64,000 nucleotides of DNA from Hyphochytrium catenoides. Lineage: Eukaryota; Protista; Hyphochytriomycota. Of the stretch, positions 7,705 to 27,640 are shown one piece after another; within the stretch, counting starts at the first letter, position 1, and every line of letters starts with the position of its first letter. A program made the translations under genes and the position numbers. The notes beneath the pieces are model-generated. The model had not been told where the DNA came from, searched no databases, and saw only the letters and a list, made by a program, of their open reading frames with translations. The DNA lies in contig FLMG01000972.1 of NCBI GenBank assembly GCA_900088475.1, forward strand, positions 9,183 to 73,182, written 5' to 3'.

Positions 7705-10700
7705 ATGGCCAGCGGACCGACGAAACCCAGTGGTTTGCAGTATCTCCAGTTCCTAAGGGATGAAGCTGCAGCACTTGAGACGCCATCTAGGAGGTCGGGT
7801 GTGGCCAGCATAGGAAGCGGAAGAGGAAGAGGAGCTGGGACTCCTGGATTACCTGGAAAGAAGAAGCATAATAGGAATGTTGATCATCAAATATCTCCAC
7901 CACAGCTCAATGAAAAAAGAGGAGGAGAGAAACTACTGGAGAATGAACAGAACCGTAGTAGCAAAGATTGTCGATCTCCTGCAGCCAAGAAGCCAAGGTA
8001 AGCCAAGGGAGAGTTGGTTCTCCCACTTTACCTCCATCTTCGCAGTGTTGCTCTATCTTCCATTAGCTTGCTGTGGTCATTGCCGCGAGTGGTGCTTAAT
8101 AAACGTTTCTGACCTTATACTTGATGTTACATTCCTTATGTCCTGTCCTTAACGTCTCTTCCACTGAAGGTCAATGCCATCGTCCTCCATGGAGCTCCTA
8201 ACAACAATCAAGACTAAACTAGTGAAGCCGCTGAAAGAGAACAAAGATGTTCAGGATGAAACTCACCTCAATCTTCCCTCTTCCCAACTGCGGTACGTCG
8301 TGTTTCGTGACTGCTCTAATATTGGCCAGTGAAGACCTTATAAGGATGCACTAACTCTCTTATTCCTCGCCCCGAACATACCTCTCTTCCATCCCCCTTA
8401 TGCTCTCTTACCGCTCGTTCCTACTTCTCTTTCCAATCCATTTGTTGCCCCCCTAAATCCTCCGTTATCTCTCACGTACGTGCAGTCGACATGAGGAAAG
8501 AGTGGTCTCTCTACTGGAAGATGTGCATGCCGCGCTTAGGGCTAAAAGGTATTCATCGTCACTACTTGTCACTCCCACACACCTCTTATCATGTGTACCT
8601 CTAATATTCTACGGTTCACTTCTTTCCATCTAAACCCTTCGGCTTTCTGTTCGTCGCATTGGACGGTGGTAGACAAAAGACCGGAAAGCCGGAGGACCTA
8701 TTGGAAGGCGGAAGAACAACAACAGAAAGCCAACAAAGATATAGTCAGGGCAAAGCGCCCAAGCATTCTGGGAACAAAGAGGAGGTACTAGCCCCTGAAA
8801 GGAATGCAGACCTTTCTGCATACCTTCTTCGGAAAATTCTTGTCCACCGTCAACCTTGTCCTTGATTATTGTCACATCTGCAATGTCATGTTGACCTTGG
8901 CGTTCCTTCTTTCGCAGCAGCTGCCGTCAATCCCCTCATCAACCGCGCTGGACGTGGGACTGGTAACTCCCAGGGACGCTGTAGATGAGCTGCCCCAAGA
9001 GCTATTCTCGCTCTTTCCAACGGGAGACCCCCAGCCAGCCGTCGACCTAACGGACTGGGCCTGGAACATTCTAGAGGGGGCTGTGCTAATTAAGGCAGCC
9101 TCTTATCTCAGCCCACACGTTACCTCTATCACCTTGCCGGGGCTATCTGAAGAAGTGCAAATGTCTGGTATGGCACCACTTTGCTTTGCCTTATCTTGGT
9201 TGACCCATGTCCCGTTTCCTTTAGCTTCTCGTCTCCACAATCCTTTCATCTTGTTGCTCTCTTTCTTTCTGCGAAAGTGGATCACAATGAGGTAGTTCTT
9301 GACATCTCCACCCTATTCGTCACATGCGACTGGTCCTTTTGTAGCAGTGAGCGTATCCATCACTCTCTGTCATCGTTGCTTTAACGGCCACCTCCCTTCC
9401 TTACTTTTGGAGTCTCTCGTCTTCTTCTTCTCCAACTCCTCTGTCGGCCCATCCATCTTCTCTGTATCACCTATTATTGAGGTGAGGATGTCCTTTGTTC
9501 GCGCTCCTCACTTCCTGTGCGTTGCTGCCTCACACTGCTGCCAGCTGTTACAAGCTTCCTACTGGCCGCTCCAAACCTGTCACATCTGGATCTCTCCCGT
9601 TGCAGAGTGAGAAATATGGTAAGGGCCATTGTTGTGAGATGTACAGCAGAGAGTTAGGAGGAAGGCCGTGGGACAGATAACATATAGCGAGGAGAACAGA
9701 GAAGCATCGCAAAGGCACTGATCTCGTTGGCGTTTACCATCACTACCTTCTCTCCCTCAGGCTTCGCAAGTCATGCTGTTAACAACCAATCTACCACGAC
9801 TCTCTTCCTTCCGGTTATCTGGCTGTGACTTTGTCAATGAAAGTAAGTCGTCCTCCTTTGCATCCTTCCCAACCTTGAATGGGAAGACACAGCCAATTCG
9901 TATCACTTACATTATGTATGCCAAACTGATTGCACAACCGCAGAGACCTTGCGAAGTATTGTTTCATCTGGTGTCTGTCTCACGGTCTTAGACATATCGG
10001 AGTGCCACAATATCGGCCCGGGGAGTTTAGGAGCATTGGGCTCGAAGCTAACCTCGCTTCGACTCTTGAACGTATCGGGATGCAGTCTTGAAGAAGCAGA
10101 GGTGAGCATATAAAGAGAACCGACTAATGTCGCCCTAAATTCAAAAGATCTCTGGATAACCTCTCTTGTTGTCCTCTGTCTCTTAACCCTTGCGGACCTG
10201 GACATCGCTGCCATAGATCTGTGAGGTCATTGTCGCTAACCGAGGGAGCCTTCAAGACTTTGCAGCGGCACGCTGCGACTGGGTAAAACTACTACCGTCA
10301 CCCTACACGCTCTCTATTCTACATGTTACTTTTTTTACTCCTTTCTCCGCTAACCCTTTCCATCACCGGAGTTTGGCGGCTCCATGCCATCAACCTCTTC
10401 TTTGACTCTGGATCCTCTGACTCCTTCGGTCTTCTCACTATTTGTTCCAGGTCACTGATGATACACTGGCTGCGTTAGGAGAGTGCAAGCGGGTCATCAA
10501 GGCAAACCTCTCCTATTGTACCAAGATAACAGACCAAGGGGTAACAGCTACGCCAGCCGCCACACAGCTTCCTTTTCCTTTTCCGATCCTTTCGCACTTC
10601 CGTCTAAAGATATGAGCTTCAGATCTCTCTTCCGCCCTACCCTCACCCTATCGTCTGAATATTGTCTCCTAGGTTGAGTGCTTGGCCCAAATACCCGTGG

Positions 10701-13700
10701 TATACGGCTCAAGGAGACACCAAGCGTTCTTACATGCCGAGTGCCTTGACTTGACGGGCTGCGATGCACTTTCTGGAGTTTCCCTGAGCTGGTAAGCGTC
10801 GGTTATGCGGGCCCTTGGCGGCTGCGTCTCTGTTTGATGGTGCCATCCTGTCTACGATTTCCCTCTTTCAATTCAATCTTGCCTATCTGTTCCCTCGTCG
10901 CTTCTTTCTGCCGGGCGGAGATTTGCTATGTAATGGATTCATGAGAACTCACGTCGTACTGGCAAGGATCTCTGCCGCAGCACCCGCTCTGATATCTCTT
11001 AGAGTTGGAGGAGGTCTGTTGCTGGACAGTGGAGGGGTGGGCGCACTGTGCAGTCTCCGCGGACTGAAAGAGCTCCTACTCCATCACAGCCAAGGGCTTG
11101 ATGACAGGTAGACCATGAGGAATCACGCAAGTCACGGAGAGAGAGGAGAGAAAGAAAGGGATTTGTAAGGGAGAGAGACGTACGAAGAGCTCGCGACCCC
11201 TCCTCGCTCGGCCGTAGCGGAGGCAGTGGTCAAAGGCAAATTGATAGGCGTGATGGCCTTCGCCCGATCGCTTGTTACTGCTTAAACAGCCAGCCCTTTG
11301 ATGGGCATAGAGTGTTGGCCTCTGATTAATCAGCTCAAAACCCGTGGTCTCACGCGATTCTTCGTTTACTGTCTATTTCTGGCGATGCATTCATTGTGCA
11401 CGGTGCCTCATATCTTCACAGGGCAATCCAAAGACTCTTCTCCGATTCGGACGGAGGCCTTCTTTGCTCGCTCCAGACTTTGGACATCTCCTTCTGCTCT
11501 TTGGTGACAGGACAGAGCCTTTCTTCCTCTTTTGCCTCTTTGCCTTCCTCCTCTCCCTCTTCCATCGTTGAGCTCGTAATGAACGAGATTGGGGAGGTGC
11601 AAGAAGACCAACTGATTATCATATGCAAGGCTCTTCCCGCTGTGGAAAGGGCAGAGCTACAAGGTTCCCACGCCGTTCCACCTCTACTCTCTCTCTCCTC
11701 TCTCTGTCAGAGGTCCATGACTTTCTTTCAGCTTCCGTTGCCCCATCTCCTCTTCCAGCCTTTTTGCCTCCTCTCAAGGGCCGTCTTCATTGTCTCTCTC
11801 TTTTCGGAGATCATTCCCTACTACTGGGCTTATCGCCTCTTTGCTTTTTGTTTAGGGTGTTCGGGGGTCACGACACGGTCACTTACAGTCCTTGCTCGAC
11901 GGTGGCGGCGCACTCTGCGCAGTTTAAGGCTCTCACAATGCCCGCATCTCCACCCCGAGGGGCTGCAGGCCCTACGTCCGCTCTCCGCTCTCTACGACCT
12001 AGACGTCTCAGGGTGCAAAGAGCTCCATGGAAGCTTTCCTCAATCTTTGCCAGATAGTCTCAGGGTCCTGGCATGCAAAGGTGAGTGAGCGGGAGGCAAA
12101 AAGGAAAAGCTGGATAGAAGATGGTCAACCCAAAATATGATCAATAGGTGCCTTCTTTCCTCTTGCGGCCAGTCAATGGACTGTGCTAAGCCATGTAAAC
12201 CCACGACCTTGCTCTTTCTGCGTCTCTCTTCTTACGTCCATTGCGCCGTCCTTTGTCTCTTGTGGTTACCCTCGGCTAACTCCTCTTGGTCCTTCTAGGT
12301 CTAACATGTTTGGGAGACGAGTTTCTCTCTTTCCTTCCTGCTTCCAGTGGTTTAGAGAGGCTCGACCTCAGTGGCTGTCAGACCATAACTTCGAAGTTTC
12401 TGGATGTTCTCTGCTCTTCTCATCCTCTTCTTACTGCCGCAGTCCATCGTACCTCAGGGAAAGAAGAGAGAGATGGAGCAAAAGAAGACGTAGAAGAGAG
12501 CGATAACGATTTTGCAAAAGCGTCCTTTGGTGGTCAGGACCTCATTGAACTCAATCTCTGGGGTTGTTCTGAGGTCTCTGAGTCCTCTCTGAAAAAATGT
12601 GTAGAGGCCATGAGAAGAAGAGAGAGAGAAAGGGCCACGATGCAGACAAAGATTGGGAGACAAGCAGGAAGAGCGGAGCAAGAGGAGAGAGGTGCAAGGT
12701 TTATCGCCTTCTGCAAGATTGAAGACGAGCGTTTCTATGGGATTAGAGCTCATAGACAACTAAGGCTGCAGGAAACGTTCTGGCGGAGCTGCACCAAGCA
12801 GAAGAAAGCAGCCACAATCATAACGGCAGCGGTACTGTCAGAATCCTTTTCCTGTTCTCGCCATAACAACCTAGAGGGTGCATATCGCTTTATATCCCAC
12901 TGCTCTGAGTTCATTACGGCTCTCATCTTAGATATAATTAGGATTTACCTGGATAGCTCCCCGTCCGCAACTGCTTCCTCTCTCCTTCTCTTTCCCGGTT
13001 CCTCAAGTTGACATTACCACCCGATGACTCCTTTCGTCTGCTCAATGCCAGGTACGCAAGTTCCTTGCCACGCAAAGAGAGGCCAGACGAAGGAGACGGG
13101 AGGGCCTCCTACAGCGCAAGGCCTCTACTGCCATCCAGGCCGCGTGGAGAGGCTACAGAGAGAGAAAGAGGATACGGAGGACAAGAACCAACATATCGTT
13201 TGTTTCTTCTCTGATCATCTTCTATCTTAATAGCCGACGGTACCTTGGTAAAAAGCGCAAAGCCCTCGCTTTCTCAAGACACAGTGCTTTGCGGAGTGCT
13301 TTTCGGCAATGGAAGCGGAGAACTGAGCAGCAGCTCGCAGAGAAGGGAGAGAGACTAATGAGAGACTTGGAGGAGAAGGCGGACGCCTTTCGTGTCTCCT
13401 CGCTCCTTTCCAGTCACTTTCGCGCTATCTCCCTTTATGTAAAGGCCAAGGGGATGCGCAAGAAGAAAGCTGTTCTCTTCTGGAAGAAAAGACGAGTGCC
13501 CCATCTTCTGTCAGCGTGGAGAGCTCTGTCCCTTAGCTCTGCTCAACAAAGAGAGAAACAGAGGCACATTCTGCTCCTTGTTGTCCCGTTAGACTGGTGG
13601 AACTCAACCCGTCAAGGAGAGACTTATACAGAGAGAGCTTTTCGACTATATCGCCGAATTCTTTTCAAAAGATGGAAGAGAGATGCGAAGTATGCCAGAG

Positions 13701-16700
13701 GAAGGAGACTAATGAAAGGTAGAAGACACCTCTTTCCCTATCCTCTTGCTCCTCTATTATTCTCTACTTAAGAGCTGCCTTGAAGCTCTTAGTACTTACC
13801 ACCTCTCTCCTCTTCTCCGCGGGATTTTTGACTTCTTACTTTCTTCTCTACTACTCTTTTCCTTCTCTTGCCTTTCTCTTCTCTTGCTCCATCGATACAG
13901 GGATGCGAGACGCACAATTTCGCTACTTCAGACGATGGAGAGAGTATGCGGAGAGGAAGAAGCAGCACAGGATGAAAGTGGCAAGAAGTTGGAATAAGAT
14001 TCTTCGAGCACAGCAGTTCAGAGTAAGTGGGGGGAAAGAGGTCATCTTCTCCTGCATCTCTCATTCTGTTCCTGCCTCTCTCTCTCCGCTTCTTCTTTCC
14101 TTTCTCTCTCTCTCTCCTTCTTTCTCTCTCTCTCTTATCTATCGGTTGTTGATCATTTGGACCCGGCTCTTGCTGCGTTGCCACCATTTCTGCCTAATCG
14201 GACTCTTGTCTTTCTCTCCGCTCGATAAGAGGGGGCCTACATTGTCCCTCTCCTGGTCGCTCACTTCTCTACCAGCTATGGTGTTTCTCTCTTCTTCTTT
14301 TGTCTAGTTGTTCTACCTCATTCTACTGAGTATCATGTCCGCCACATCTTTCAGTAGCTGAACCTCTCTACTCTTTTCTGTGTTGCCCTGATTTCCTTCT
14401 TCTGCTCTTCTGTTATAGTGCTGGACTGCTTGGAAAGACTTCGTGGGCGAGCAGAAGAGGAATCGCCGAGCACTTGCATTCTTTCGCCAAAGGGCAGAGA
14501 AGGATAGCGTGAGGCGATGGAAACAGTTCACTAGGGAAGAAAAGGAGAGAAGAGCCCAGGAGAGAGAAGCAGAAAGAGTAGTGCGTCATTTGAGAGAAAA
14601 CATTGCTGTTGGCCATTGGAAGACTTGGGCGATGGAGAGAGGAAGAGTCAAGAGGAAAGTGAGGGCCACGCTGTCCCTTATATTCCATCGGACACTCTGC
14701 AATACCTTTAAAGCCTGGAGGACAGTGCTTGAGGATCGAGCAGAGAGAGAAAGAGTTCTCGCGAAGCGATGGCAAGAGAAGGAGTTGAAAAGGCTCCTCA
14801 AGACCTGGGTCAGTCATCTGGAACATGTTTGTCTTTGCTCCGTTTCTCATATGCTCCGGGTTTTCTCATTGGATGGCCTCCTCTTGCTCTCTCTCTCTCT
14901 CTCTTCCTAATCTGTCTCACTTCGCTCTCTCCTGCTCTCTCTCTCTCCTTTTCTCTCTCTCTCTTTCTTTTGCTCTCTTTCTCTCTGGCTTTCACCGTCG
15001 CCTTCTATCTGGTAGAATCTTGGCACCGTTCTGGTTCTCATATCCCCTTCTTGTTCTTGACCGTACCAATGGATCTCATATTCTCCCGTGCCAGGACTCT
15101 TTCCTGTGCTTACGAGCAGATTTCCACGTCGGAGCCATGCAGCTCCAAGCTTTCTGGCGAGGGGTGATAGGAAGGAGATACGCAGAGAATTACTATCTAG
15201 AGAGAACTTGGGCAGCAGTTGTGTTCCAGACTATCTGGAGGGGTAGAAGAGCAAGGAGAGAGAGAGAGAAAAAGAAGAGGGAGAGAAGGCTGCAAGACTA
15301 TCTCGCTCAAGAAAGAGAGCAAGACAAGATGGAGAAAGAAGAAGAGCGAATATGGGAGTATCTTAGATTTGAGCGAAAGGTTGCCGTGATACAAGCGTTA
15401 TGGAGAAGGAGAGAGGCACGTAGGCGTTACTATCGAGCTATTGAAGAGCAGAAGAGGCGCCAGAGAGAGAAAGAGATGGAGGAGAAGAAAGAGATACTGC
15501 GGAAGCTCGAAGAGAAGAAGGTAGGAGGAGACGACAATAGATTGAGCAGCAAAATGAGGGCTCTCTCTTACCCTTTCCTTCCTTCTCTTCCTCTCTGTCA
15601 GCTGCGGCTGGAACGCATGGAGAAACTTAAGCATGTTGCCGTGATAGAGGTGCAAAGAGTGGTGAGAGGGTTCCTGGGACGGAGAAGAGCGCAGAGACTG
15701 CGGGAGGACTACTTCGAATCGCAGTGCGCCGCGATGCTACAGGCCGCCTACAGAGGCAGGATCGTCAGAAGGTTGCCCTCTTATAGTTCTTCTCTCGGTC
15801 CCTCCTCGTTGTGGCAGTTGATGGTCTTGATCTTCATCTCTCTCTATTCTCTCTCTCTCTCTTCATCTCTCTCTCTCACTCTCTCGCTCTCCCTCTCTCT
15901 CTCGCTCTCGCTCTGTCTCTCCCTCTCTCTCTCTCTCTCCTTTGCTGTCACTTTCGCTAGTCAAACTGACCACACTGCCCTCTCTGCGTCCCGTCTGCAG
16001 AGCCGTCTACGCCAAGAGGCGACATCGAGTTACCATGCTGCAAGTGGTTCAGAGTCGAAGAGAAGAGGCAACAATTCTCCGAACCATCGGCGCCAAGGAC
16101 AGGAAGGGGCAAAGCCTTGTCCGTTCGTTCTTTGACTCGGTCGGGGCGTCTCCTGAGTCTTTCACCTTTGGCGCTAAGAAAATCCTACGGGACGTAATGG
16201 CTGACTACAAGTTCTTCCGGCGGTGTCTTGAGGAAGAGCTCGAAGTTCTGAGGGAAGGGCTCTTCTCAAAGAGAAGGAGGACTGCCGTGAGAGAGAAATG
16301 GAGAAAGGAAGAAGAGGAGGAAGGACAGGTCCTTCCAAACACTGCTGTCAGAGTAATAATCAGAGGTCATCCTAGGGAAGGAGAGACTGGTAAGATCTCT
16401 CCCCTAACTTACGTCCTCCTTGATGTCTCGCTTCCCCTGCCTGCCTGGGCTTCAGCAACAATATCAGCATCTTCTTATATTCCTCGCTGCCTTACGACCG
16501 ATTCGCCCGCTGACGCCACTAGCCGTCTATCTTCGTCGTTCTCAGGGTATGTTCTTCGTGTGGACATGCGGTCTCGTCCTCCTCTGGCTGAGGTCCGAAT
16601 GGACAGCGATGGAGAGGTGGAGTTCATCCCCATTCTTATGGAAGATACGGACATTATTCAATATAGCAGCATGAAGTACTNNNNNNNNNNNNNNNNNNNN

Positions 16701-19700
16701 NNNNNNNNNNNNNNNNNNNNNNNNNNNNNNNNNNNTCCTTCCATCTGTCTCAGCAGCACTGCTTTTGGTTGCAACGGGAGGCGAAAGCTTGTGACGTAAT
16801 CTAACCTTCCACAGCGTATTGCGTGACACTGCTGTCTTTGCTCTCCTTTCTCTCGTATAAGGGGCATGACTTGAGTCTCCTTTGGGGTCTCTCTCCTCCT
16901 TATTTCTCTCATTTCTCACATCTGATAGAATCCTCTCTTTCGATGCCTGTCCAACAGGTCGACACGATGGATTTCACTGCGATACGCGCTGGAGCCTCTG
17001 CCGACCTAAAGAGCTTCCGCCGCCGGGTAATGGAGTATGCGAGATCGATACGAGAAGACAGGAGGAGAGACAGAGCGGCGAGGGTGATCCAAAGAGCAGC
17101 GAGGGTGATGCACGCCCGGATGAAGGTAAGCTGAGAGGAAGATAGAGCAAGTGGTGAGCGAGAGAGAGAAGAGAGTGTGTGTCACACGGAGGCGTCTCCT
17201 CTGAGTCTCTTAGTTCCTTGTAACGAGGGAGACAACGTGTTGCAATTGTCTTTTTTGCAGCTCTGCAACCTGAAACTTAGCTTTCTTGAGAGATGGCCTC
17301 TAGACAAGTCGAGTCCCGCCATTGCTTGCACCTCTTCTCGCATGCTCACGTCTTGTCTCTGTCTGGTCCTGGCCTTAGGTGGCCGAGGAACGTCTCAAGC
17401 AGGGGACGTTGGTAGCTCGCCGTCAGGCCATTCTTCGGACCGTTCTGCAACATCTCTCCCTTTATAACAATAGAACTGCCAAAATCCTGGCAGAGCTCAA
17501 CCTCGTGCGCGAAGAGTATCTTCCGCCCTCTCTTCCCTCTGAGCCATTGATAATAGAAGCCATAGCAGACAGATTCAGGAGGTTTTTGGCCCGAGAAAGA
17601 GAGAAGAGAGGGAAAGAGGACCAAGATAGCAAGATAGACGAGGTCTTCCGAGGGACGGAAAAGAAGGGAGAAGTCTTAAACGTGCCGGTCCCCTTCCTCA
17701 ACTTTGGCAGGCTTGCGGACGAAGTGTCTCTTAGAATAAAGAGAGCGCCTACGCTTCGGATGGCTACTCTACTGGAAGCGCAAGGGAAGATAGAGGCGGC
17801 GAAGAGGCTAAGAGAGGAGGAGTTTGCATGGGAACACCGAGTAAGGAGACAAAGCAGAAAGAAAATAGGAGAACGTCAAGAATAGCCTCCGTACATCGCC
17901 CTCTCTCCTTATTTGTGCTTGTTCCTTTCTTCTTCTGCTGAGCCAATGTTCGTGCCTTTCAACAATTATCTATTAATCTCTTTGTTCTCTCTTTCTCTCT
18001 CTCGTCAGCCTTTCCTTTGGCCTGTTTTCGCCTTTCCTTCATTCTCTCTATGTCCTAACCAGTACCGTCTCGCTCTTCTGATGACCGCGCAGGAGAAGAG
18101 GATCCGAGTGGGTGCTTATTGCTTTGCTCAGCTTTCTTCTTCTCCTCTCACTCTCTCCGACGGCTGGGCTATTGTCCACAGTCAATGGAAAGATGGTGCC
18201 CCTCACTCTTGGGGAGTAGCCAAATTTCTCTCGGGAGTCGCATTCAATGGAAGGCAGAGGGTGGGCAAACCAGCGGAAACCGGAAAGAAAAGACAGGACC
18301 AGGGCGTGGTGTGGGCAGAGAGAGGAAGCGTGTACGCCAAGTACAAACATATGGCAAAGATGCGGCTTCAAGAGCAACAGGTACCGCTTAAGAGTAGAGA
18401 GCTCGTGGTAGAAAGAGGAAGATGATAGTAAGAGAGATGGGCAACAGAGAGATAGAGAAACATGCACAGATAGGGCAAAGCGAATAAAGATAATGCGAGA
18501 GAGGAGAGGGGCGGCTGGGGAAAGAGCGGAGACATATACATAGAGGAAGCGAGAATGGGCTAGCAGAGGGAAATCAATTGATCAGGAAGAGACACCTTCC
18601 CACATCCACATCATCATCGGCGAGGTCCTTCATACAGCGCAAAGAACTTTAACATGTTTTGCTTGTTTGTCTTCCAGGACAAGCACCAGCGTCTCTCTCT
18701 TCAGTTACTCGTGGCGCACAGTGAATATGTGAGAGCAAGAGAAAAGGAGGGGCCGACCGGTTATGCCATGAGACATCAGCAGCTGTCACTGCAAGAGGAA
18801 GAGCTAAAAGCTGTGTGGGGTCAATTGGTAGAGGCGAAGAAGTCAGAGCGAGAAGAGATGGAGACACTTCTGGCAGCGGTAAGATTATGCCTTTTCTTTC
18901 TTTTTCTGTCCGTCGCTACATGCCTGTTCTTCAGCTCTATGGCTTCTCGTCCTCGTTTGCCCTCTTTGTACCCGAGCTCTCTTCAGCATCTCTCGCTATC
19001 AGGTTGGATGATGATGACTCTTCTCTTTCCTCTTCGTGGCTCTCAGGAGGCAATCGCTGTGGAGAAGCGGAGGAGAGCTATCAAAGAAGTGCTGGAGAGA
19101 GCCAGGCTCTTAGGGAGGTTGCGCGTAGATCCTCCATCTCCTGTCTTTGACTTGAGAGAAGGAGAAATTGCCTCCTTCTCCCTCCCCTTCTATGTCCGTG
19201 CCAAGGGCAATATTGAGGCACAGTGGGACGATGGGAACTGGTATAGAGCACACATCCTATCTCTTCGAAAGGGAGAAGAAGAGGCGCTAGTAGAGTACGA
19301 AGATAACGGTAGCAAGGAGCTCCTCTCTCTCTCCTACAGAGAGGATCTTGAGAGGGAAGGAGGACAGGATAGAGCTCCTAAAGCAGAAGACAAACAGGAG
19401 AGAGAGGAGAAAGAGAGACCTCCCTCAGAAGAGGGTCATACCGATGAAGAGAGACCAAGGAAGCTGATCTGGAGACCGTGGAGAGCGGAAGGAGCCGTAG
19501 AGCTTCTTTGGTCGACTCCTGAGAGCAACGGGGCTCCCATCTCTTACTACACAGTCCGCTGGGTAAATGACAGTGATAGCTCAGATAGAGGAGAGCTCAC
19601 TCTCTCTTTCAAAGACTCTCTTTGTCCTCCTCCTCCCAAGAAGAGGGAAGAGGAGGAGGCAGTCCGGGAGAGAAAAGCGATGACAGATGTTCCTGGTCAC

Positions 19701-20915
19701 GTAAAGCCCTCTTCTGATGAAGAAGAAGAAGAAGATGATGAAGAGTAAGCAAGAGCTGATTGTGTAACTCCTTCCTCCCGTCTCTTCCTCCTTTCTTAGC
19801 TTCCAGTCTAGATACGACGCAAACGAAACAACTGTTCCCAACCTTTGGCGTCTCTTCTACATGCTGACCTTCCTTCCTCTCTTCTCTCTCTGACAGGCCG
19901 CTTGCTGAGCCCATGGATGATGATGATGAAGAAGGCGACGGCGACAGGAGAAGAGAAAGAGAGGAGGGGGGAGAAGAGGGGATCTTCTCCCATCACGCTA
20001 TGGCTTGGCCTCTACGAGTGGACAACCTCTACACCTTCACCATTACATCCACTAACGCTGAGGGAGAGAGCGAGCCCAGCGCTAAGCTTAGGGCAGTGCA
20101 GGCGGAACCGCTAATGTATCGGATGGCAGTGACGAGGAAGCAGGAGCAACAAGAGAGAGAGGAGACAGAGAAGAGACTTCGAGACAGGAAGAGAGAGATG
20201 GAACTGAGAATCATCATCAGACAGAAAAGAGAAGAGAGGCGTTGTGAGATCTGCCGCGAGCTGCAGGTAGAGGAAGCACTTCTTACGGCTCTATCGTTTG
20301 ATCGCACTTGTCCACCTTCTGCTGCCATCTTCTTTAATTGTATGAGTCTTTCCTCTCTCGTGCACTGTTTAGGATATTCAAATGTACATTTATTTGTGTC
20401 TCAAGTGTAAATTTATGTGTGTGCGTGTCTCTCTCTCCTTCTTCGTCTCACTCTCTCCCTTCCTCTGTCCCTCTTTCTCTTTCTCTTTTTTTCTTTTTTT
20501 TGCCCTTTTTCTCTACCTGTGTCTTGTTCTTCTCTCTCTCCCGCCGACTCTCACGTTCAATCTCACTCTTTTGGTTTAAATTTTCCTTCTCCTGCTTCAC
20601 CGTCGCCGCTTTGTTGCCTTCTACCGCCGGTTCTTTCCCTTCCTCCTCTCAAGCCCGACCCAGAGTCAGTGCTGCAGCACGTGCGCACTGCCCACGGCGT
20701 GACTTGGGTCTGTCCATTCTTTCACTGTCGCACGCCCTGCGCCTCTCCAGCCGCCCTCTCCTACCATCTCCGGCACTGCACCGAAACTCTCATGAACGGC
20801 TTCGAGAAAGAGGTATCAAGTCTAGCTAGATATTTATCTAGTTCGCAGTCTCTCTCTCTCCTCTTTCTCTCGCAAAACTCTCCCTCACTCTCTTACTCTC
20901 TCTCTCTCTTCTCTG

Positions 20916-20946
<31 letters not shown>

Positions 20947-23577
20947 TGCTTTCTTTTTTCTTTCTTTTTTACCTTCTATCTTTCTTTTTCTCTTTGTCAT
21001 CCTCTCTCTTTCCTCACCCTCTTTCTCTCTCTCTTCCTCTCTTTAAATCTTGGTTGTCCTTTCTCTCCTTTTGTCCCCAGAATTTTCCCATCTCTGTTCT
21101 CTCTCCTTTTTCTTAGTACTCTCCTATCTTTCGACTCCTTCATTCACGTTTTTTGTCGTAGGATGCGGAGATACAGCGGATATTCCAGCTCTCTCGGCAG
21201 TATTGCAAGCTCAAACGGAAACGTCACCTCCCTCCAACTCTCACTGCTGGAGGCCTAGTAGGGAGAGACGAGGAGCATGAGAGAGAAGAAGAGAGAAGGA
21301 GGAAGGAAGAAGAGTTTTATGATGCGCGCCTAGCTCAGGCTGACGCGGAGGCAGTCAAGCTTTCGCAGGACAGACTTGATAACGCGAAGAGAAGAAGAAT
21401 TGAGAAGAAGGAGAGGAAAGACCGGATCCGTCCTCCCCTATTACCCTCCATCCACAAAGTGCGTTGATCATTTTGTTTCTCTACCTCCCTGTCTTCCTTG
21501 CTGCTCTCTCATTTCAGTGAAGCCCTAAGCAACACTCTGGGGATCTCTTTGCTCTCTTCTTCGCCGTTCTTCCTACCCTGAGAGGCTCTTTCCTCTTGCA
21601 AACAGGACGATACCCTCCTGTCCCCCACTTCTGTCTCACCAGAACCTTGCGTTCCTCTCTCTGTCTCCCTTTTCTCTTTCTTTGTCTCTCTTTCGTGTCT
21701 CTCTGTCTCTCTCTCTCTCCTGTCTTGTTCTCAGTTCACCTGCTTTCCCGTTCTGCATCATGTCTTCCTGGGCGCTAGGTGTCGTACACTACTGAGCAAG
21801 CTGTTAGAGAAGATTGTACGCAAACTGCTGAGGCTCTGGTGGCGGCAGAGAAAGACTTGGAAGCGCTGGGAACGAGTCAGAAGAGAGAGGAGGCCGAACT
21901 CGGGTCTGAAAGGAGAAGGCTTGAGAGCCAACTGCAAGAGTATAGGGCCAAAATGAAGAAGGCAGACGGTGCGATGCCCTTGCTCTTTCCTAATCGTCTT
22001 CTTGTTTCCTCCTCTCTTCCACGGCTCCTCGCTTTCTTCTTCCTCCTTCCCTCATTCTCTTTCTTTCCTACTGCTCGCTCTGCTCGAAGGCTCTCTCTCT
22101 CTCTCTCTCTCCCTCTCTCTCTCTCTCTTTCTCNNNNNNNNNNNNNNNNNNNNNNNNNNNNNNNNNTCTCTCTCTCTCTCTCTCTGTCTGTCTCTCTGTC
22201 TGTCCCTCCCCTCCGCCTGATTCAGGTTCTCCACGTTGCGGATCGACCTCGTCTGCTTTTTTCCTATATGTCTAAATGGCTTGATCTAAGAATATATCCT
22301 CTTCTTGTCTACTTTGAAGGTTATCCGAGTGCCATCTATCTTAGAATAAGCTGCTTGTTGGTTGTCTTCTTTTCCCTTCTATGTTTCCATGGTTCTCCTC
22401 CTCTGTGACCTCTTCTTACCTCTGGGTTGACATAGGTTGGGAGAGAGAGCGATTCGCTCGCGCCAAGAAAGAGGATACAGAGCGGCTGCAAGACGTGGTT
22501 GAGAGGCAAGAGAAAATGGTGGGAGAGTATGAGAAGAAGCGAACGGAACTAGAGAAGCGGATCGCGAACCTCCGCAAGCAGAGAGAAGCACTAACTGAGC
22601 TGTTATCATCAGTCCTCTCCCTAGTTGAGACACAGGGCAAGGTCTCTCTCTGCACTAGGGAGGTTGAAGAGAGAGAAGAAAGGCACATGAGAGAGATATC
22701 TCGCCTGCAGACTCGCCTAGAGGAGCTCATCGGACTCTCCATAGCAGAGGTGAAAAAGCTCGAGATGTGGGAAACAGACTCTCAACGCAAAAGGCTCCAT
22801 CTGGACACTCTGCGAGACCGGCTTCGGAACCTGCAGATGAGGCGGCGCGCGGAAATCACCGGCATCGCTGAGGAAATGGAGCTGCAAGATGCCTATGATC
22901 GCGAGGTCTTCGAAGCGATGACGGAGATTGTGCCAGATCTCAACGGAGCGAGAGGGTATTTAGAGAAAAGAAGAGGAGGTAACGGCCCCGGAGATGTGGA
23001 AAGGATCCTCTCCAACGAAGAGAAGGCAGCCATCCAGCAGAAAGAGTTGGAAGCCTTGCGTCAGGCTGTTGTCTCAGAGGAGAAGGAGGATGGAGAGGAT
23101 GGAAAAGAAGACCATGACGAGAGTCCTCTATCGCCTCCTCCCCCGCCGCCGCCGCCACCTCCTCCGCCTCCAGCAGCGGGAGGCCAAGAAACTTTGAAAG
23201 AGAGACGCGACGGAGAGGCTAGAAATCTTCAGCTATCTCCATTTTTAGACGATGGGAGAGACGAAGAAGGAGGAGAGAGAGCAGCCAACAAACGCTTCTA
23301 CCTCCGTCTGGAGGGAAAGTTTGATCGCGGTAGGATTGCGGGCCAGGTTTACATCGAGTTCACTGACGGAAGCAAGTTTGAAGGTCCCTGGGAGGAGGAT
23401 GTGAGCAGCGTGACTCGTCTCAAAAGAAAGAGGGAAAAAGGCAGCAAAGCCGAGAAGAAGAAAGGAAAGAAGACAGTTCATCACAAGGAAGACGAAGTCT
23501 GGGGCAGGTAGTAGGGACTTGGTGGATCGGCTGCTCAGCCTTGCCGTGGGCTATCTCTCATTCCCCTTCTCTCATAT

Positions 23578-23608
<31 letters not shown>

Positions 23609-26600
23609 GTGTCCCTCTTCTTTCCCCCCTCTGTCTCCCTCTGATCCTTCTCTCTCTGTTGCTTACGTGTCATTGGTCAGTAAGCTGACCTCATCTCACT
23701 TGTCTACATGTGCAGGTGGACCACACCTTCCGGAGACACTTGGGAAGGACTGACAGTTGACAACCACTTTTGCCCAGAGGAGGCACAAGGGGACTTTCTT
23801 CTAACCAGAGCGAATGGTGACCAGTACGATGGCTCGTTCTTTGATGGAAAGGAGAGCGGTTTTGGCACTCTCCTTTTTGGGAAAGAGACACAAGAGAACG
23901 ACAGACTTGCAAGAAGAAAGAGCTCTCTTGTCCCCTCTTCTTCCCTTGCCAGTTCGGGGGAATACTTTGGAGAGTGGCAGAGAGGCAAGAGACATGGTTA
24001 TGGCGTACAGATTCTCTCCAATGGTGAGAGATATGAGGGAGAATGGCAGGAGGGAAGACCACATGGGAAAGGGAAGATTGTCTTCCCAGATGGCTCCTTC
24101 TATGAGGGAGAATATCAAGCAGGAAGATGGAGTGGGAGAGGAAAGAGAGTTTGCGCCAATGGGGACACCTACATAGGCGAGTTCTTAGGGGGAGAAAAAC
24201 ACGGAGAAGGAGAGATGAAGTACGCAGATGGAACAGTGTACGTTGGCGCCTTCTCTCATGACCAGAGACATGGGCCTTTCTCCGTCATGAAGTATGCGGA
24301 TGGAAGTCGGTATGAGGGGCCCTTCAGAGAAGACATGGAAGAGGGAGAGGGCACTCTTTTCTATAAGGAGAAGATAGGCAAAAGTGGAAAAAAAGAGGAG
24401 GTTCTCTCTCGAAAAGGAGTTTGGGAGAAAGGAGCTCTTGTTCGCTGGCTAACTCACCCCATCAGCAGAGAGCTTACGCTGACCTTCGTACAGAATTTCG
24501 GGGTCATCAGGCAGGTGGGAGCCAGGGGAGTCTTTGAGTTTGAGGTGGACCGAAAGCGTCTCCGCTCCGCTTTTTCTCTCCTTGTGGCCTCCAAGCTCCC
24601 CGAGCTACCTCCTGGAGTTGACAAGAGAGATCCCTTCGTTCGGGCCATTGTGCTGCACTTAGCAGCTGCGGAGGAGGAGATGACCGGCTCAAACACGCTA
24701 AAGAAAGTGGTTGAGAGGGCGACAATAGCTGAGGAAGAAGAGAGGCGTGCTGAAGAAGAAGAAGCATCTCTCGCTCTCCAGCGAAAGGAAGCGGAGGCCA
24801 GGCTTAGAGAGGCAGAAGAGCGGCTGCAGGAGGCAACGGACGAGCATGATGCTCTGGTCGGCCGAGAAAGGTACCTGCAAGGAGAGATTGCCATGTTCTG
24901 GAAGCGAGACCCGAAGGTAAGCGTTGAAATAGACTGATGACAGTTCCATTCCGCTGTCGTGTCTGATTAGACTGAGTAGCTAAGCCTAGGATTTGTCTCA
25001 TATCTGGACCTCTCCCATTGTCTCTTCATCACTTTTGCCCTTTCACTCCTTGACGGCGCCTTTGGTTTCATTCCCAGGGCTACGTCAGGGCCTATGAGGA
25101 AGCTGCTAAAAGTCTCAGAGAAGTCAAGCACTCGGAGTGGGAAAAGGTCGGTTCAGTCCTTACGTCTTGCTCTTAAAGCGCTGCGACTACCCTGTTTCTT
25201 CTGAGATGTGCCTCCACCATCGCTCCTTTCCTTACATGGGATATGGAACTAACAAGTCTGATCGGTGTACAGCTTCACAACCCTTTCCTGACGCTTAAAG
25301 TCCTCCTTTATCACCTTTCAGCCACTTCCAGCCTCGTAATATTCTCACCTCTCCCTCTCTTTTGCTTGAATTAGCTTAAAGAGGCGCCGGATAAGTGGCC
25401 CCAGGTGCTCCGTGATGTCCTCTACGGAGTCTGCATACTTCTGAACTACACACGGGAAGTTTACCTCCACGGCAAGCCATACAAGCCCTCTCCAACCGAA
25501 CTCCTTATGATTGTGGCGGACTCTGAGGAAAATGTGGAGCTGGTCAGAGAGATAGTGCTAGAGCCTTGCAGATTCACAGTCACTTCTTAGTTGCCTCTGT
25601 GCCTTGTCTTCATTCTTCCTCTTACCTTCTCCCTCATCCCCTGGCGCTCTTACTCTCCTCCCTTACTCGACATAATTGGCTGACGCAAGTGTGCTGCCTC
25701 CTCTCTCTCATCGCTTCAGGGTGACCTTGAGGGCTTAATACACCATTACCCTGTGAAGGCAGTGTACCTTCTCCCGCTCTTTGATCCTTACTCCTTCTCT
25801 TTCGGCGCGAGGAAGAAGATGCTTGACAGAGTGGCTCAGATTGTGCATAACCCTAAGATCAGACCCAACAATCTTAGCATGACTAAGATCTCCATGGCGG
25901 CCTCGGCTCTAACGCTCTGGCTCAGAGCAGCATTTGCATACGCCTCTGCAGCCTGTAAAATGGCCCCTTATCAGCGAGAGATAGAGCAAATCCAGTTTAA
26001 GGTCCCTAGGAAAGTCAGAGAGAAAGAGGAAAGAGAACATGAAGTGGAAGAGCAGAAGCTTTTTCTGCAGGAGATTGCAGCACGACAAAAAGGCTTCGAG
26101 GAGACGGTGAAGAGCTGCAAAAAAGAGAGGGAAAGCGCCGAAGCTGTTCTTCGCGAGGTAAGCTCAGCCTGGACGATAAGGCCAAGAGGAGCGACAACTA
26201 GAAGGAGCCTTTTTCTCTCTCTCGCTTTCGGTCTTTCCTGTTGATTTTTGATTGACGTTCATTATCTATTTACTGCCATCTTGTATCCGATCTTAGGCTG
26301 AAGAACTCCAGAAGGCAGACAAGTCGGGCCTACCGCGGATTATTCGAAAGGATGCTCTAGACTCCAAGGATTTCACGCAGCAGCTCTACGATGAGGACCT
26401 GAGGAAGATTGAGGAGGAGAAAGAAAGGGAGAGACAGAGACAGCGAGAGATAATGGCCTCTCAGAAAGACAAATGGCAGGCTCTGAAGGTCAATGTGCGC
26501 ATCCTCCTCCGAGCTCGAGGAGGAAAAGTGAAGATGTCAGACTTTCTCGTCCTCTATGCAGAGCAGTTCCAAGAGCGCTTTGATGTTTCTTCCTTTGGCT

Positions 26601-27640
26601 ATAAACGGCTGAGAGACGTCTTGGAGCAGATCAATGATGCTTGCGAGGTGAAAAGGGTCGAAGGTGAAGAAGACGGGGACAAGAAGAGAAAAGATGGTAG
26701 AACAGAGGCAGGAGAAGAAGGTTGGGATGACTATGTTCTCCTCAAAGAAGCCAATGTTCTCCGCTCCTACAGCTGCAAACTCTGCTTAGGGATGGAGTTC
26801 GATACTATTAACGGTCTTCGAAGACACATCCGCACCAAGTGGCACGCTGCTAACATGCAGAGAGAACGAGAAGGGGCAAGAAAGGCAGGACAAAAGGGAG
26901 AAGGAAGAGAAGGCGGAAAAGAGCTTATTGCTTTCTCTCCATCCTGGGTTATGTGGAAGGAGACATACGATGACGGAAGTCTGGAAGTTATTTATAGAAA
27001 TGGAAGCACCGGGGAGATCAGAACTGAGAGACCAGAAGAGATGGACTTCCATGAAGTTAACTGGGTCTTTTCAGAGGAAGAGGTGGAAATGGAGCTGAGT
27101 AGAATGCTCTACAGGGGAGCGGATGGAGAGAAAGAAGGAGGTAAGGAAGAAGAGGCAGTGGTCCAGGGTGAGGACGATGGGGTTCAGGTCGGTGCAGAAG
27201 AGAAGGGATTGCCCACGACTTCGGACAGTTCTGATCCTCCTCTTCCTTCGGGCTGGATAAAAGTCGTTCTACCGCCAGAAAATGGTGGTGGAGAGATAGC
27301 AGCAGGAGAAGGAGGCGCAGAAGCCGCCTACTACTATAACGAGCAAACAGGCGTCTCACAATGGGAGTTGCCGACGATGACAGACGCAATGCACACTACT
27401 AGCGAAGAAGGGCCAGAAGTGGGACAGGACGGAAGATCAAAGGAACCCGATGTAGCAGAGAAAGCGATCTCCTGGCCGGATTCTAGTTCTCCGGGCTTGG
27501 CTCCATCGTCAGGTCCCCTGTATCAACAGCAAGGGACAGAAGATCCGGGAGGGCAGTGGCCTCTGGGCAGTGGCCCGGAGCCTGTTTGGACATGGCAAGA
27601 GCTAGATGAAGCGATGGTGCCAGCGCTCCCTCCCGCTTGA
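7705..27640 (+). CDS. Giant (~4000 aa, ~37 exons) multidomain protein: LRR_CC - IQ - Sfi1-like - IQ - KOW - Tudor - FN3 - C2H2 - coiled coil - MORN - dynein stalk/MTBD-like - LOTUS - C2H2 - WW x2
   Basis: Exons join through phase-compatible GT-AG junctions from ATG 7705 to TGA 27640. Examples: 12831/13052, 18878/19047, 21458/21779, 23507/23716, 24915/25078, 26157/26297. Continuity is least certain around 10100-10920 and across the N gap at 16681-16735. Confidence 0.75.
9030..12600 (+). other. Cys-containing leucine-rich repeat region (FBXL/AMN1 type) of the giant protein
   Basis: Repeats NLSHLDLSRC, LTVLDISECHNI, LRLLNVSGC, ANLSYCTKITDQG, LQTLDISFCSLV, LRSLRLSQCPHL, LYDLDVSGC, LERLDLSGCQTIT, LIELNLWGCSEV. 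Confidence 0.85.
20840..21050 (+). repeat. (CT)n-rich intronic microsatellite; representative of many (e.g. 15838-15940, 28340-28620, 31700-31860, 63900-64000; GA-type at 2820-3250 and 27870-28060)
   Basis: Long imperfect CT/TC runs, often adjacent to the N gaps. Confidence 0.9.
23320..24440 (+). other. MORN repeat array (~10 copies) of the giant protein
   Basis: YFGEWQRGKRHGYG, YEGEWQEGRPHGKG, YEGEYQAGRWSGRG, YIGEFLGGEKHGEG, YVGAFSHDQRHG, YEGPFREDMEEGEG. Confidence 0.92.
25078..25995 (+). other. Dynein heavy-chain stalk microtubule-binding-domain-like segment in the giant protein
   Basis: Three exons read AYEEAAKSLREVKHSEWEK|LKEAPDKWPQVLRDVLYGVCILL...LFDPYSF...NPKIRPNNLSMTKISMAASALTLWLRAAFAYASAACKMAPYQREI. 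This follows the dynein MTBD pattern and is flanked by coiled coils. Confidence 0.75.
26480..27375 (+). other. C-terminal LOTUS/OST-HTH, C2H2 zinc finger and two WW domains of the giant protein
   Basis: LOTUS: VRILLRARGGKVKMSDFLVLYAEQFQERFDVSSFGYKRLRDVLEQI. C2H2: YSCKLCLGMEFDTINGLRRHIRTKWH. WW: ..IYRNGSTGEIRTERP and PPLPSGW...YYYNEQTGVSQWELP. Confidence 0.8.

What the first reader, a model, noticed from the sequence alone, without database searches (positions are those of the whole stretch)
7705..27640. A single ~4000-aa scaffold combining about 11 unrelated module types
Seen: phase-compatible junctions link LRR_CC, ~8 IQ motifs, Sfi1-like repeats, KOW, Tudor, FN3, C2H2/C2HC fingers, poly-Pro, ~10 MORN repeats, a dynein-stalk-like segment, LOTUS, C2H2 and two WW domains. 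I know of no characterised protein with this architecture. Inference: a calcium-regulated basal-body or flagellar-root scaffold linking centrin/calmodulin, membranes, microtubules and RNP machinery.
Basis: partly seen in the sequence, partly recalled or inferred. Interest (0 to 1): 0.8.

Follow-up and report, generated by a model that had tools for sequence, protein, structure and literature searches.

The report
Giant microtubule-scaffold gene with motor-less dynein stalk
The stretch is one real, intron-rich gene for a protein of about 3,900 residues, found so far only in water moulds and a few unnamed microbes. It strings calmodulin/centrin-type, membrane-type and RNA-granule-type modules onto a dynein microtubule-binding stalk that has no motor, and nobody has studied it.

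Summary
A spliced model on the + strand (7705-27640) has 34 exons, all 33 introns are GT-AG, and there is no internal stop. It encodes about 3,923 aa.

The model aligns end to end (1,807 bits, profile positions 41-3643 of 3671) with a profile of 14 oomycete proteins of 3,451-3,914 aa. In relatives the same module order lies on uninterrupted ORFs of 2,848 aa (Phytophthora nicotianae) and 3,451 aa (a metagenome contig), so the fusion is not a gene-model artefact.

- **Assembly gaps:** both fall at or inside introns, and at most about 8 profile positions are unaccounted for.
- **Well supported modules:** LRR, IQ, FN3, MORN, LOTUS, WW and a full dynein stalk with microtubule-binding domain.
- **Weakly supported modules:** Tudor and KOW.
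- **Motif level only:** Sfi1-like repeats.

The family is unnamed and I found no paper on it. No RNA evidence could be obtained. The flagellar or basal-body role remains an inference, with odds of about 0.3.

The scan's two earlier notes (s1-331060, s1-331265) are on this same window, not on other DNA.

The parts
7705..27640 (+). Whole coding span of the modelled gene: 34 exons, about 3,923 aa, stop codon at 27638-27640
   Evidence: Spliced model has no internal stop and all introns are GT-AG. It scores 1,807 bits against the oomycete profile, positions 41-3643 of 3671.
7705..9167 (+). N-terminal basic, low-complexity region in 5 modelled exons. ATG 7705 is the first in-frame ATG after a stop at 7645, in a CAAAATGG context.
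   Evidence: Dynamic-programming exon model, weak profile match to positions 41-261, and the start-codon check. This is the least certain part of the model.
9944..12831 (+). Leucine-rich repeat region of the FBXL/AMN1 (cysteine-containing) type, in 7 exons. No F-box was detected.
   Evidence: Pfam LRR_6, LRR_1 and LRR_Zer-1 on the exons. Orthologues carry PF25372 LRR_FBXL15. Profile positions 247-599 are matched.
13133..13165 (+). First IQ motif (IQAAWRGYRER)
   Evidence: Pfam IQ E 7e-4, regex match, coordinates.
13262..14808 (+). Basic helical region with about 10 tryptophan repeats at roughly 27-33 aa spacing (Sfi1-like, for example ALAFSRHSALRSAFRQWK)
   Evidence: The strict Sfi1 consensus occurs 2 times here against 0.05 in shuffles (3 of 2,000 shuffles reach it), and orthologues behave likewise. 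Spacing is listed. There is no Pfam Sfi1 hit.
15143..15769 (+). Cluster of five IQ motifs (IQ2 to IQ6)
   Evidence: Pfam IQ 3.6e-8, strict IQxxxRGxxxR matches, coordinates.
16344..16680 (+). KOW-like SH3-type beta-barrel, split by intron 16390-16545. The exon runs into gap 1.
   Evidence: Alignment A2. The AlphaFold model of the orthologous segment gives a 5-strand barrel at pLDDT about 90. The best PDB match is Spt5 KOW6-7 (5ohq), rmsd 1.3 A, E 1.3e-3. There is no Pfam or PDB sequence hit.
16681..16735 (.). Assembly gap 1, at the 5' end of an intron. The donor site is unread.
   Evidence: Sequence view. The flanks align to profile positions 1510 and 1518. The next exon starts at 16958 after ccaacag.
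17087..17119 (+). Seventh IQ-like motif (IQRAARVMHAR), conserved as ARVIQCAARVYLAR in orthologues
   Evidence: Alignment A2 has nearly invariant I and Q here. Coordinates.
18156..18236 (+). Conserved SDGWAIVHG...PHGWGVAKFLxG segment of unknown fold, possibly a degenerate MORN-like pair
   Evidence: Alignment A3. No Pfam hit.
19191..19346 (+). Tudor-like domain
   Evidence: Pfam TUDOR E 0.0063 and Agenet 0.0094. In the exhaustive search this segment matches proteins that Pfam scores as strong multi-Tudor proteins.
19464..20101 (+). Fibronectin type III domain, interrupted by an acidic insert and by intron 19745-19896
   Evidence: Profile A3 against PDB hits titin, NCAM, DSCAM and contactin FN3 domains at 1e-5 to 1e-31. 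Orthologues carry PF00041.
20237..20779 (+). C2H2 plus C2HC-type zinc-finger pair, spanning intron 20267-20653
   Evidence: The Cys/His pattern is conserved in all orthologues (sequences). Profile positions 2184-2236 match at E 1e-11. No Pfam hit.
21162..23133 (+). Long coiled-coil region in 3 exons
   Evidence: Profile positions 2240-2745. Only generic coiled-coil Pfam noise.
22134..22166 (.). Assembly gap 2, inside a (CT)n microsatellite in intron 21969-22435
   Evidence: Translations show SLSLSL runs on both sides. Junction analysis.
23134..23172 (+). Run of 13 prolines, with no counterpart in the oomycete orthologues read
   Evidence: No comparable proline run appears in the orthologue sequences printed.
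23341..24352 (+). MORN repeat array of 8-9 recognisable repeats, spanning intron 23508-23715
   Evidence: Pfam MORN 3.5e-31. PDB hits are MORN1 at 4e-40, FAP266 and RSPH1. Repeat count.
24680..26157 (+). Complete dynein-type stalk in 4 exons: CC1 (24680-24916, 25078-25146), microtubule-binding domain (25375-25542, 25720 to about 25990) and CC2 (to 26157 and into the next exon)
   Evidence: Profile A1 against PDB gives only dynein heavy chains, the best being the DNAH1 stalk/MTBD 8i3j at E 2.9e-7. The AlphaFold model has pLDDT 86. All 50 top Foldseek PDB matches are dynein stalks over about 305-320 columns, TM up to 0.61. The protein-language-model look-alikes carry PF12777.
26480..26656 (+). 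LOTUS / OST-HTH domain
   Evidence: Pfam PF12872 at 2.5e-8.
26768..26845 (+). Single C2H2 zinc finger of the JAZ/U1-like type (YSCKLC...HIRTKWH)
   Evidence: Weak Pfam matches: zf-C2H2_4 at 0.031 and zf-C2H2_jaz at 0.15. The finger is conserved in the orthologue sequences.
26942..27373 (+). Two WW domains (26942-27040 and 27242-27373)
   Evidence: Pfam WW 3.7e-6 for the second. Orthologues have two WW stretches at 1.7e-13. Motif coordinates.

Best explanation
Shown: window 7705-27640 (+) is a single, intact, intron-rich gene of at least 34 exons. It encodes a protein of about 3,900-4,000 aa. That protein is the distant orthologue (about 31% identity) of an uncharacterised giant protein family so far recorded in oomycetes and a few unnamed metagenomic eukaryotes.

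The conserved order of modules is: N-terminal basic region, FBXL-type LRR, one IQ motif, about 10 Sfi1-like tryptophan repeats, an IQ cluster, a KOW-like barrel, a helical region, a GW motif pair, coiled coil, Tudor, FN3, two zinc fingers, a long coiled coil, 8-9 MORN repeats, a linker domain, a full dynein-type stalk (CC1, microtubule-binding domain, CC2) with no AAA+ motor, LOTUS, a zinc finger, and two WW domains.

Inferred mechanism (not shown): it is a non-motor microtubule-anchored scaffold.
- The stalk tip would bind the microtubule lattice as a dynein stalk does (odds about 0.6).
- The roughly 550-aa basic helix with Sfi1-like and IQ motifs would carry a row of centrin or calmodulin light chains, which would give it calcium sensitivity (odds about 0.5).
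- The LRR, MORN, Tudor, LOTUS, KOW and WW modules would dock partner proteins, membranes or RNPs.

The cellular site is most likely the zoospore or flagellar-apparatus cytoskeleton (odds about 0.3). A role on cytoplasmic microtubules is about equally possible.
For: - One gene: a collinear six-frame profile match from profile position 143 to 3644, and collinear tblastn of four full-length orthologues.
- One gene: 33 phase-consistent GT-AG junctions whose joined peptides reproduce conserved orthologue motifs, for example ENVEL|GDLEGLIHHY and GHPREGETG|YVLRV.
- One gene: a stop-free model of 3,923 aa scoring 1,807 bits.
- The architecture is real as one polypeptide: an uninterrupted 2,848-aa ORF runs from the IQ cluster to WW in P. 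nicotianae locus L002.
- The architecture is real as one polypeptide: metagenome genes P0065 (3,451 aa, LRR to WW) and P0004 (2,527 aa) translate straight from the DNA. Logan contig L006 shows the same order.
- Modules.
- No motor: Pfam finds no AAA or dynein motor domain in P0017, P0010 or any window exon.
- Axonemal affinity of the stalk: the best sequence hits are DNAH1, DNAH6, DNAH3 and other inner-arm heavy chains.
- Distribution: 44 long orthologues, all the named ones from zoosporic oomycete genera including Plasmopara halstedii. Non-flagellate downy mildews are known to have lost flagellar and IQ/EF-hand genes (PMC6264045), and they are absent.
Against:
- The frame across gap 16681-16735 is unread.
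- The 5' exons and the LRR region are modelled, not proven. My unguided dynamic-programming model was clearly wrong in the LRR region.
- Sfi1 and KOW have no HMM support.
- The protein has no calcium-binding domain of its own.
- The absence from Peronospora, Hyaloperonospora and Bremia comes from length-limited, word-seeded searches, and flagellate Albugo is also missing.
- An exhaustive search with the Tudor-FN3 exon found no orthologue in other flagellate groups. The family therefore does not simply track flagella.
- Microtubule binding by the stalk is untested.
Confidence: 0.8

Rival explanations
1. In this genome the locus is two or more adjacent same-strand genes, for example split at gap 16681-16735 or in the long CT-rich introns around 20267-20653 and 21969-22435. 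On this reading the oomycetes carry a fused version.
For: No transcript data could be obtained. The donor site at gap 1 is unread. Several introns are long, low-complexity CT repeats that could hide promoters or poly(A) sites.
Against: - Every junction, including those flanking both gaps, continues the orthologue profile without loss: 1510 to 1518 at gap 1, and 2314 to the coiled-coil exon to 2385 at gap 2.
- There is no in-frame terminal stop anywhere in the chain.
- The largest non-coding interval is 776 nt.
- The architecture is a single ORF in four other lineages.
Confidence: 0.07
2. The gene is single, but its role has nothing to do with flagella. It would be a cytoplasmic microtubule-bound RNP or cargo scaffold (Tudor, LOTUS, KOW, dsRNA-type zinc finger, WW) that tethers RNA granules or membranes (MORN) to interphase or spindle microtubules.
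For: LOTUS at 2.5e-8, Tudor, a KOW-like barrel and a JAZ-like finger are typical RNP-granule modules. The stalk fold matches cytoplasmic dynein as well as axonemal dynein (8ptk, TM 0.58). No orthologue was seen in other flagellate lineages. Flagellate Albugo is absent from the hits.
Against: The stalk's nearest sequence relatives are axonemal inner-arm dyneins. The MORN array's nearest solved relatives include axonemal proteins (FAP266, RSPH1, FAP207), but also MORN1. All named holders make zoospores. None of this is decisive.
Confidence: 0.3
3. The dynein-like segment is only a generic antiparallel coiled coil with a helical tip that resembles dynein by convergence. On this reading it does not bind microtubules.
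For: Sequence identity to dyneins is only 12-17% in the fold alignments. The domain just upstream of CC1 shows no dynein similarity. The Pfam MT model itself did not fire on the window exon.
Against: - The profile search of all PDB sequences returns dynein heavy chains almost exclusively (27 of the 32 matches at E up to 1; the other five are generic coiled coils). They align at the H6/CC2 hallmark (S-A-x3-C-x-W-V-R-A...E-P) at E down to 2.9e-7.
- The fold match covers the entire stalk, about 310 columns, for the top 50 hits.
- An independent language-model search gives PF12777 clusters at a score of 0.96.
Confidence: 0.1

Closest known systems
Uncharacterised oomycete giant proteins, e.g. Phytophthora nicotianae F444_21959 (3,884 aa), Saprolegnia diclina SDRG_12379 (3,663 aa), Lagenidium giganteum N0F65_002137 (3,849 aa)
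   Same: Full-length collinear orthology with the same module order from LRR to WW and about the same length.
   Different: Identity is only about 31%, and the window copy sits on a branch of 3.8 substitutions per site outside all of them. The window gene has at least 33 introns, against about 343 bp of intron in all in the P. nicotianae gene (11,998 bp for 3,884 aa) and none in the metagenome genes. The window copy has its own poly-Pro and acidic inserts. Phytophthora and Plasmopara have a 29-aa insert in the microtubule-binding domain that the window lacks.
Dynein heavy chains (stalk and microtubule-binding domain; nearest are axonemal inner-arm DNAH1, DNAH6, DNAH3)
   Same: CC1, a helical microtubule-binding domain and CC2 of full stalk length. 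The H6/CC2 hallmark is conserved.
   Different: There is no AAA+ ring, linker, tail or buttress. The sequence before CC1 is not dynein-like. It therefore cannot be a motor.
Sfi1 and other centrin-binding repeat proteins
   Same: A long basic helix with tryptophan repeats, several of which fit A-x8-L-x3-[FLI]-x2-W-[KR] at about 30-aa spacing.
   Different: Only about 10 repeats, and only 2-3 fit the strict consensus. There is no Pfam Sfi1 match and no PDB Sfi1 match. The repeats are embedded in a multi-domain protein.
MORN-repeat cytoskeletal proteins (apicomplexan/trypanosome MORN1, radial-spoke RSPH1/RSP10, FAP266, junctophilins)
   Same: A contiguous MORN array with strong sequence matches, 4e-40 to MORN1.
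   Different: In those proteins the MORN array is most of the protein. Here it is about 7% of a giant scaffold and is followed directly by the stalk.
LOTUS-Tudor germ-granule proteins (TDRD5/TDRD7 type)
   Same: Both a LOTUS and a Tudor domain are present.
   Different: There is a single copy of each, about 1,500 residues apart. The Tudor match is weak, there is no sign of an extended Tudor, and the organism and context are entirely different.

Membership tests
Oomycete LRR-IQ-MORN-stalk-LOTUS-WW giant protein family (unnamed) | End-to-end collinear alignment with full-length members | tested here: met
   Model against the 14-member profile: 1,807 bits, positions 41-3643 of 3671. Collinear six-frame and tblastn hits.
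Oomycete LRR-IQ-MORN-stalk-LOTUS-WW giant protein family (unnamed) | All modules on one polypeptide | tested here: inconclusive
   This is met in relatives by uninterrupted ORFs. In the window it is supported by a stop-free spliced model but not by RNA.
Dynein heavy chain | Antiparallel coiled-coil stalk with a microtubule-binding domain | tested here: met
Dynein heavy chain | Ring of six AAA+ modules with linker and tail | tested here: not met
   No AAA or dynein motor Pfam family in the window exons or in P0017/P0010. The region before CC1 is not dynein-like.
Sfi1 / centrin-binding repeat proteins | Array of repeats fitting A-x7-LL-x3-F/L-x2-W-K/R at about 23-36 aa spacing (consensus recalled from the literature, not read here) | tested here: inconclusive
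   2-3 strict matches per protein against 0.04-0.16 in shuffles, and about 10 tryptophan repeats at roughly 27-33 aa spacing. No Pfam Sfi1 hit at E up to 10. No Sfi1 chain among the PDB hits.
Sfi1 / centrin-binding repeat proteins | Binds centrin | not testable with these tools
   Needs a binding assay.
IQ-motif calmodulin/light-chain binding proteins | IQxxxRGxxxR motifs recognised by Pfam PF00612 | tested here: met
   Pfam IQ 3.6e-8. There are 5 strict and 2 looser motifs in the window model.
F-box/LRR (FBXL) proteins | Cysteine-containing LRRs | tested here: met
   LRR_6 and LRR_1 on the window exons, and PF25372 LRR_FBXL15 on orthologues.
F-box/LRR (FBXL) proteins | F-box N-terminal to the LRRs | tested here: not met
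   No F-box family at E up to 0.01 in P0017 or P0010, nor in the window exons scanned.
KOW-domain proteins (Spt5/NusG) | KOW sequence motif (Pfam KOW) | tested here: not met
   No hit at E up to 10. The PDB profile search found nothing relevant.
KOW-domain proteins (Spt5/NusG) | Five-strand SH3-like KOW barrel | tested here: met
   The AlphaFold barrel has pLDDT about 90. The top PDB match is Spt5 KOW6-7, rmsd 1.3 A over 65 columns, but E is only 1.3e-3, and SH3 and NdhS barrels follow closely.
Tudor-LOTUS RNP proteins | LOTUS/OST-HTH domain | tested here: met
   PF12872 at 2.5e-8, above the curated cut-off.
Tudor-LOTUS RNP proteins | Tudor domain | tested here: inconclusive
   Pfam TUDOR at 17 bits is below the cut-off of 23. 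The segment does match true multi-Tudor proteins at 1e-5 to 1e-8.
MORN-repeat proteins | Tandem MORN repeats | tested here: met
   PF02493 at 3.5e-31, 8-9 repeats, and MORN1 in PDB at 4e-40.

The most novel reading that the evidence does not exclude
A complete dynein stalk with its microtubule-binding domain, most like that of axonemal inner-arm heavy chains, was cut loose from its motor and built into a non-motor giant scaffold. There it would serve as a passive or registry-regulated microtubule anchor for a calmodulin/centrin-decorated helix, a MORN array and RNP-type modules. As far as my searches reach, this would be the first natural motor-less use of the dynein stalk. It is conserved between oomycetes and a very distant, unidentified eukaryote.
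Probability: 0.45. Interest if true: 0.8.

Novelty: new variant of a known kind. Interest (0 to 1): 0.62.

Why it matters
Orthologues have sat in public databases for years as 'hypothetical protein', or under misleading automatic names such as EIN3-binding F-box protein, radial spoke head 10-like and F-box/LRR-repeat protein 7.

If the stalk binds microtubules, the family is a natural experiment. It would show what a dynein stalk does without ATP-driven registry shifts, and how a microtubule anchor can be coupled to calcium-sensor light chains, membranes and RNP modules in one polypeptide.

In oomycetes, major crop and fish pathogens that spread by zoospores, it is a candidate structural component of the zoospore cytoskeleton. 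For annotation, it shows that this locus should be modelled as one gene of about 12 kb of coding sequence, not several.

Tried and rejected
- RNA evidence: the look-up of sequencing runs (kind rna) listed nothing. With kind any it listed only DNA-type runs of 'organism A' and some soil and bovine metagenomes.
- Crude codon-usage profile: uninformative, because it was biased towards Glu/Lys/Arg codons.
- Unguided dynamic-programming exon model for 7000-13100: it chose spurious charged ORFs in the LRR region. I kept only its first five exons and used profile-anchored junctions for the rest.
- Pfam at E up to 10: no Sfi1 or KOW. PDB profile searches for the KOW region and the Sfi1-like region gave nothing relevant beyond IQ peptides.
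- Region between the MORN array and CC1: no dynein similarity, only generic coiled coils. The idea that AAA4 remnants survive is not supported.
- Organism identity: the ADH-like ORF gave only unnamed metagenome or Logan relatives, the best at 85%. The atlas search with the CHD exon was uninformative. Lineage hints in earlier notes could not be tested.
- Literature: no paper mentions the orthologue locus tags. None combines these domains with oomycetes. None describes a dynein stalk outside dynein.
- Stand-alone stalk proteins of 190-605 aa: only four oomycete fragments were found.

Full report
**What is in the window.** The window is eukaryotic nuclear DNA of about 50% G+C, with seven short runs of N. 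On the + strand between about 7,700 and 27,640 lie dozens of stop-free stretches in alternating frames. They are separated by CT-rich low-complexity DNA that translates as SLSLSL.

**First domain scan.**
- IQ at 3.6e-8
- MORN at 3.5e-31
- LOTUS at 2.5e-8
- WW at 3.7e-6
- LRR_6 and LRR_1
- a sub-threshold Tudor at 0.006

**One gene or several: the comparative evidence.**
- An exhaustive HMMER search with the Tudor/FN3 stretch found proteins of 2,169-3,884 aa matching at about 31% identity, with the match near their middle.
- Four of these proteins, laid back on the window with tblastn, hit collinearly from the LRR/IQ region to the zinc finger before the WW domains.
- They are oomycete 'hypothetical proteins' from Phytophthora, Plasmopara, Nothophytophthora, Pythium, Globisporangium, Lagenidium, Achlya, Saprolegnia, Thraustotheca and Aphanomyces. 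They run to 3,450-4,180 aa and carry precomputed LRR, IQ, MORN and WW domains.
- A profile of 14 of them (3,671 match states) hit the window's + strand in 28 strictly collinear pieces, covering positions 143-3644.

**The fusion is real as a polypeptide.**
- The P. nicotianae gene has about 343 bp of intron in all and contains one uninterrupted ORF of 2,848 aa. That ORF covers everything from the IQ cluster to the WW domains.
- Two metagenome genes translate directly from the DNA: P0065 (3,451 aa, LRR to WW) and P0004 (2,527 aa).
- A Logan contig shows the same LRR > IQ > ... > MORN > WW order, chopped up by a prokaryotic gene caller.

**Gene model in the window.**
- Between consecutive profile-anchored segments I enumerated phase-compatible GT...AG pairs. 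Nearly every junction has a good donor and acceptor.
- The joined peptides recreate conserved orthologue motifs: ENVEL|GDLEGLIHHY, FWKRDPK|GYVRAYEE and GHPREGETG|YVLRVDM (alignments).
- A missing 23-aa exon (25078-25146) was found where the profile predicted it.
- The chain 13052-16680 gives 766 aa, and the chain 16958-27640 gives 2,374 aa plus the stop codon. Neither has an internal stop.
- With twelve 5' exons added, the model has 34 exons, 33 GT-AG introns (81-776 nt, median 218) and 3,923 aa. It scores 1,807 bits against the oomycete profile over positions 41-3643.
- ATG 7705 is the first in-frame ATG after a stop at 7645.
- The 5' exons and the LRR region are the weakest part. An unguided dynamic-programming model went wrong there, and intron 9168-9943 may hide about 60 aa of LRR.

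**The two assembly gaps.**
- Gap 1 (16681-16735): the exon encoding ...EVEFIPILMEDTDIIQYSSMKY runs into the Ns, and no donor site is visible. The next exon begins at 16958 after ccaacag. Profile positions 1510 and 1518 flank the gap. At most about 8 residues are therefore unaccounted for, and the gap most likely hides the 5' end of an intron of about 280 nt. The frame itself cannot be read.
- Gap 2 (22134-22166): it sits in a (CT)n run inside intron 21969-22435 and has no bearing on the coding sequence.
- I could not bridge either gap with reads.

**Modules: firmly supported.**
- LRR, IQ, FN3 (profile against PDB), MORN (8-9 repeats, MORN1 in PDB at 4e-40), LOTUS and two WW domains.
- The dynein-stalk claim is the strongest result. 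A profile of the region matches dynein heavy chains in the PDB almost exclusively. The best is the DNAH1 stalk/MTBD at E 2.9e-7, aligned at the H6/CC2 hallmark.
- AlphaFold gives a 73-residue helix, a helical knob and another 73-residue helix at pLDDT 86. All 50 top Foldseek PDB matches are dynein stalks, aligned over about 305-320 columns. A language-model search agrees.
- No AAA+ or other motor domain exists anywhere in the protein. The linker before CC1 is not dynein-like.

**Modules: weaker support.**
- Tudor is below Pfam's cut-off, but the segment pulls true multi-Tudor proteins.
- KOW has no sequence support. It does fold as a confident five-strand barrel whose best match is Spt5 KOW6-7 at E 1.3e-3.
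- The Sfi1-like repeats have no HMM support. The consensus is enriched over shuffles, and about 10 tryptophan repeats recur at roughly 27-33 aa spacing.
- The poly-Pro run has no counterpart in the oomycete sequences I read.

**Distribution.**
- In a maximum-likelihood tree the window copy sits on a branch of 3.8 substitutions per site, outside all oomycete copies. The organism is therefore not a sampled oomycete, and its identity stayed hidden.
- All named holders are zoospore-forming oomycetes, including the one zoosporic downy mildew, Plasmopara halstedii.
- No hit came from Peronospora, Hyaloperonospora or Bremia. Those lineages are known to have shed flagellar, IQ and EF-hand genes (PMC6264045).
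- This distribution is suggestive only. The searches were length-limited, flagellate Albugo is also missing, and no orthologue appeared in other flagellate groups.

**How it most likely works.**
- Shown: this is a single non-motor protein with a dynein-type microtubule-binding stalk near its C-terminus, a long light-chain-binding-type helix in its N-terminal half, and many docking modules.
- Inferred: the stalk anchors the protein to microtubules. The Sfi1-like and IQ helix carries centrin or calmodulin and so provides calcium control. The MORN, LRR, WW, Tudor, LOTUS and KOW modules recruit partners.
- The site of action, whether the flagellar apparatus or cytoplasmic microtubules, is open.

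**Literature.** No paper or named family for this architecture was found.

Noticed in passing
window 275-1900 (- strand): Exons of a voltage-gated chloride channel (ClC) gene, Pfam Voltage_CLC 7e-30. Assembly gap 1689-1702 lies within it.
   Followed up: partly
window 40607-43872 (- strand): A CHD-type chromatin remodeller. One 748-aa stop-free exon carries Chromo, SNF2 and Helicase_C domains (SNF2 at 2.6e-73).
   Followed up: partly
window 53223-54485 (- strand): A 421-aa stop-free stretch for a zinc-type alcohol dehydrogenase-like protein, apparently without introns in an otherwise intron-rich region. The best relative is an unnamed Logan protein at 85% identity. The next are about 57%, mostly short metagenome contigs.
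   Followed up: partly
window 58223-61473 (+ strand): Exons of a CD36/scavenger-receptor family protein (Pfam CD36 1.2e-13).
   Followed up: no
window 15830-15950, 20400-21100, 21990-22230, 28260-28850: The introns and flanks of the gene are full of (CT)n and CT-rich microsatellites on the coding strand. Of the three assembly gaps I inspected, two (22134-22166 and 28317-28346) are flanked by CT-repeat sequence.
   Followed up: no
alignment A1 columns 143-171 (P0017:3235-3600, P0047:3125-3493): Of the nine orthologues aligned in A1, only P. nicotianae and Plasmopara halstedii carry a 29-residue charged insert inside the microtubule-binding domain, after the LLNFTSN helix. The window, the Saprolegniales, Pythium and Lagenidium lack it.
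   Followed up: no
L002 14657-15481 (-), L003 10601-10999 (-), L004 9779-10177 (-): A Zf_WRKY19-type gene lies downstream on the opposite strand, directly after the giant gene in P. nicotianae and one gene further on in the metagenome contigs that encode P0004. This suggests conserved synteny and an oomycete origin for P0004.
   Followed up: no
P0013 (Globisporangium splendens, 3,611 aa): This orthologue model starts with a protein-kinase domain (PF00069) that no other orthologue has. It is probably a fusion of two neighbouring gene models.
   Followed up: no
window 23716-24916: Besides the runs of 'organism A', soil metagenomes and one bovine metagenome hold 6-16% of the sampled words of the MORN exon. 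The organism or a close relative therefore occurs in soil.
   Followed up: no
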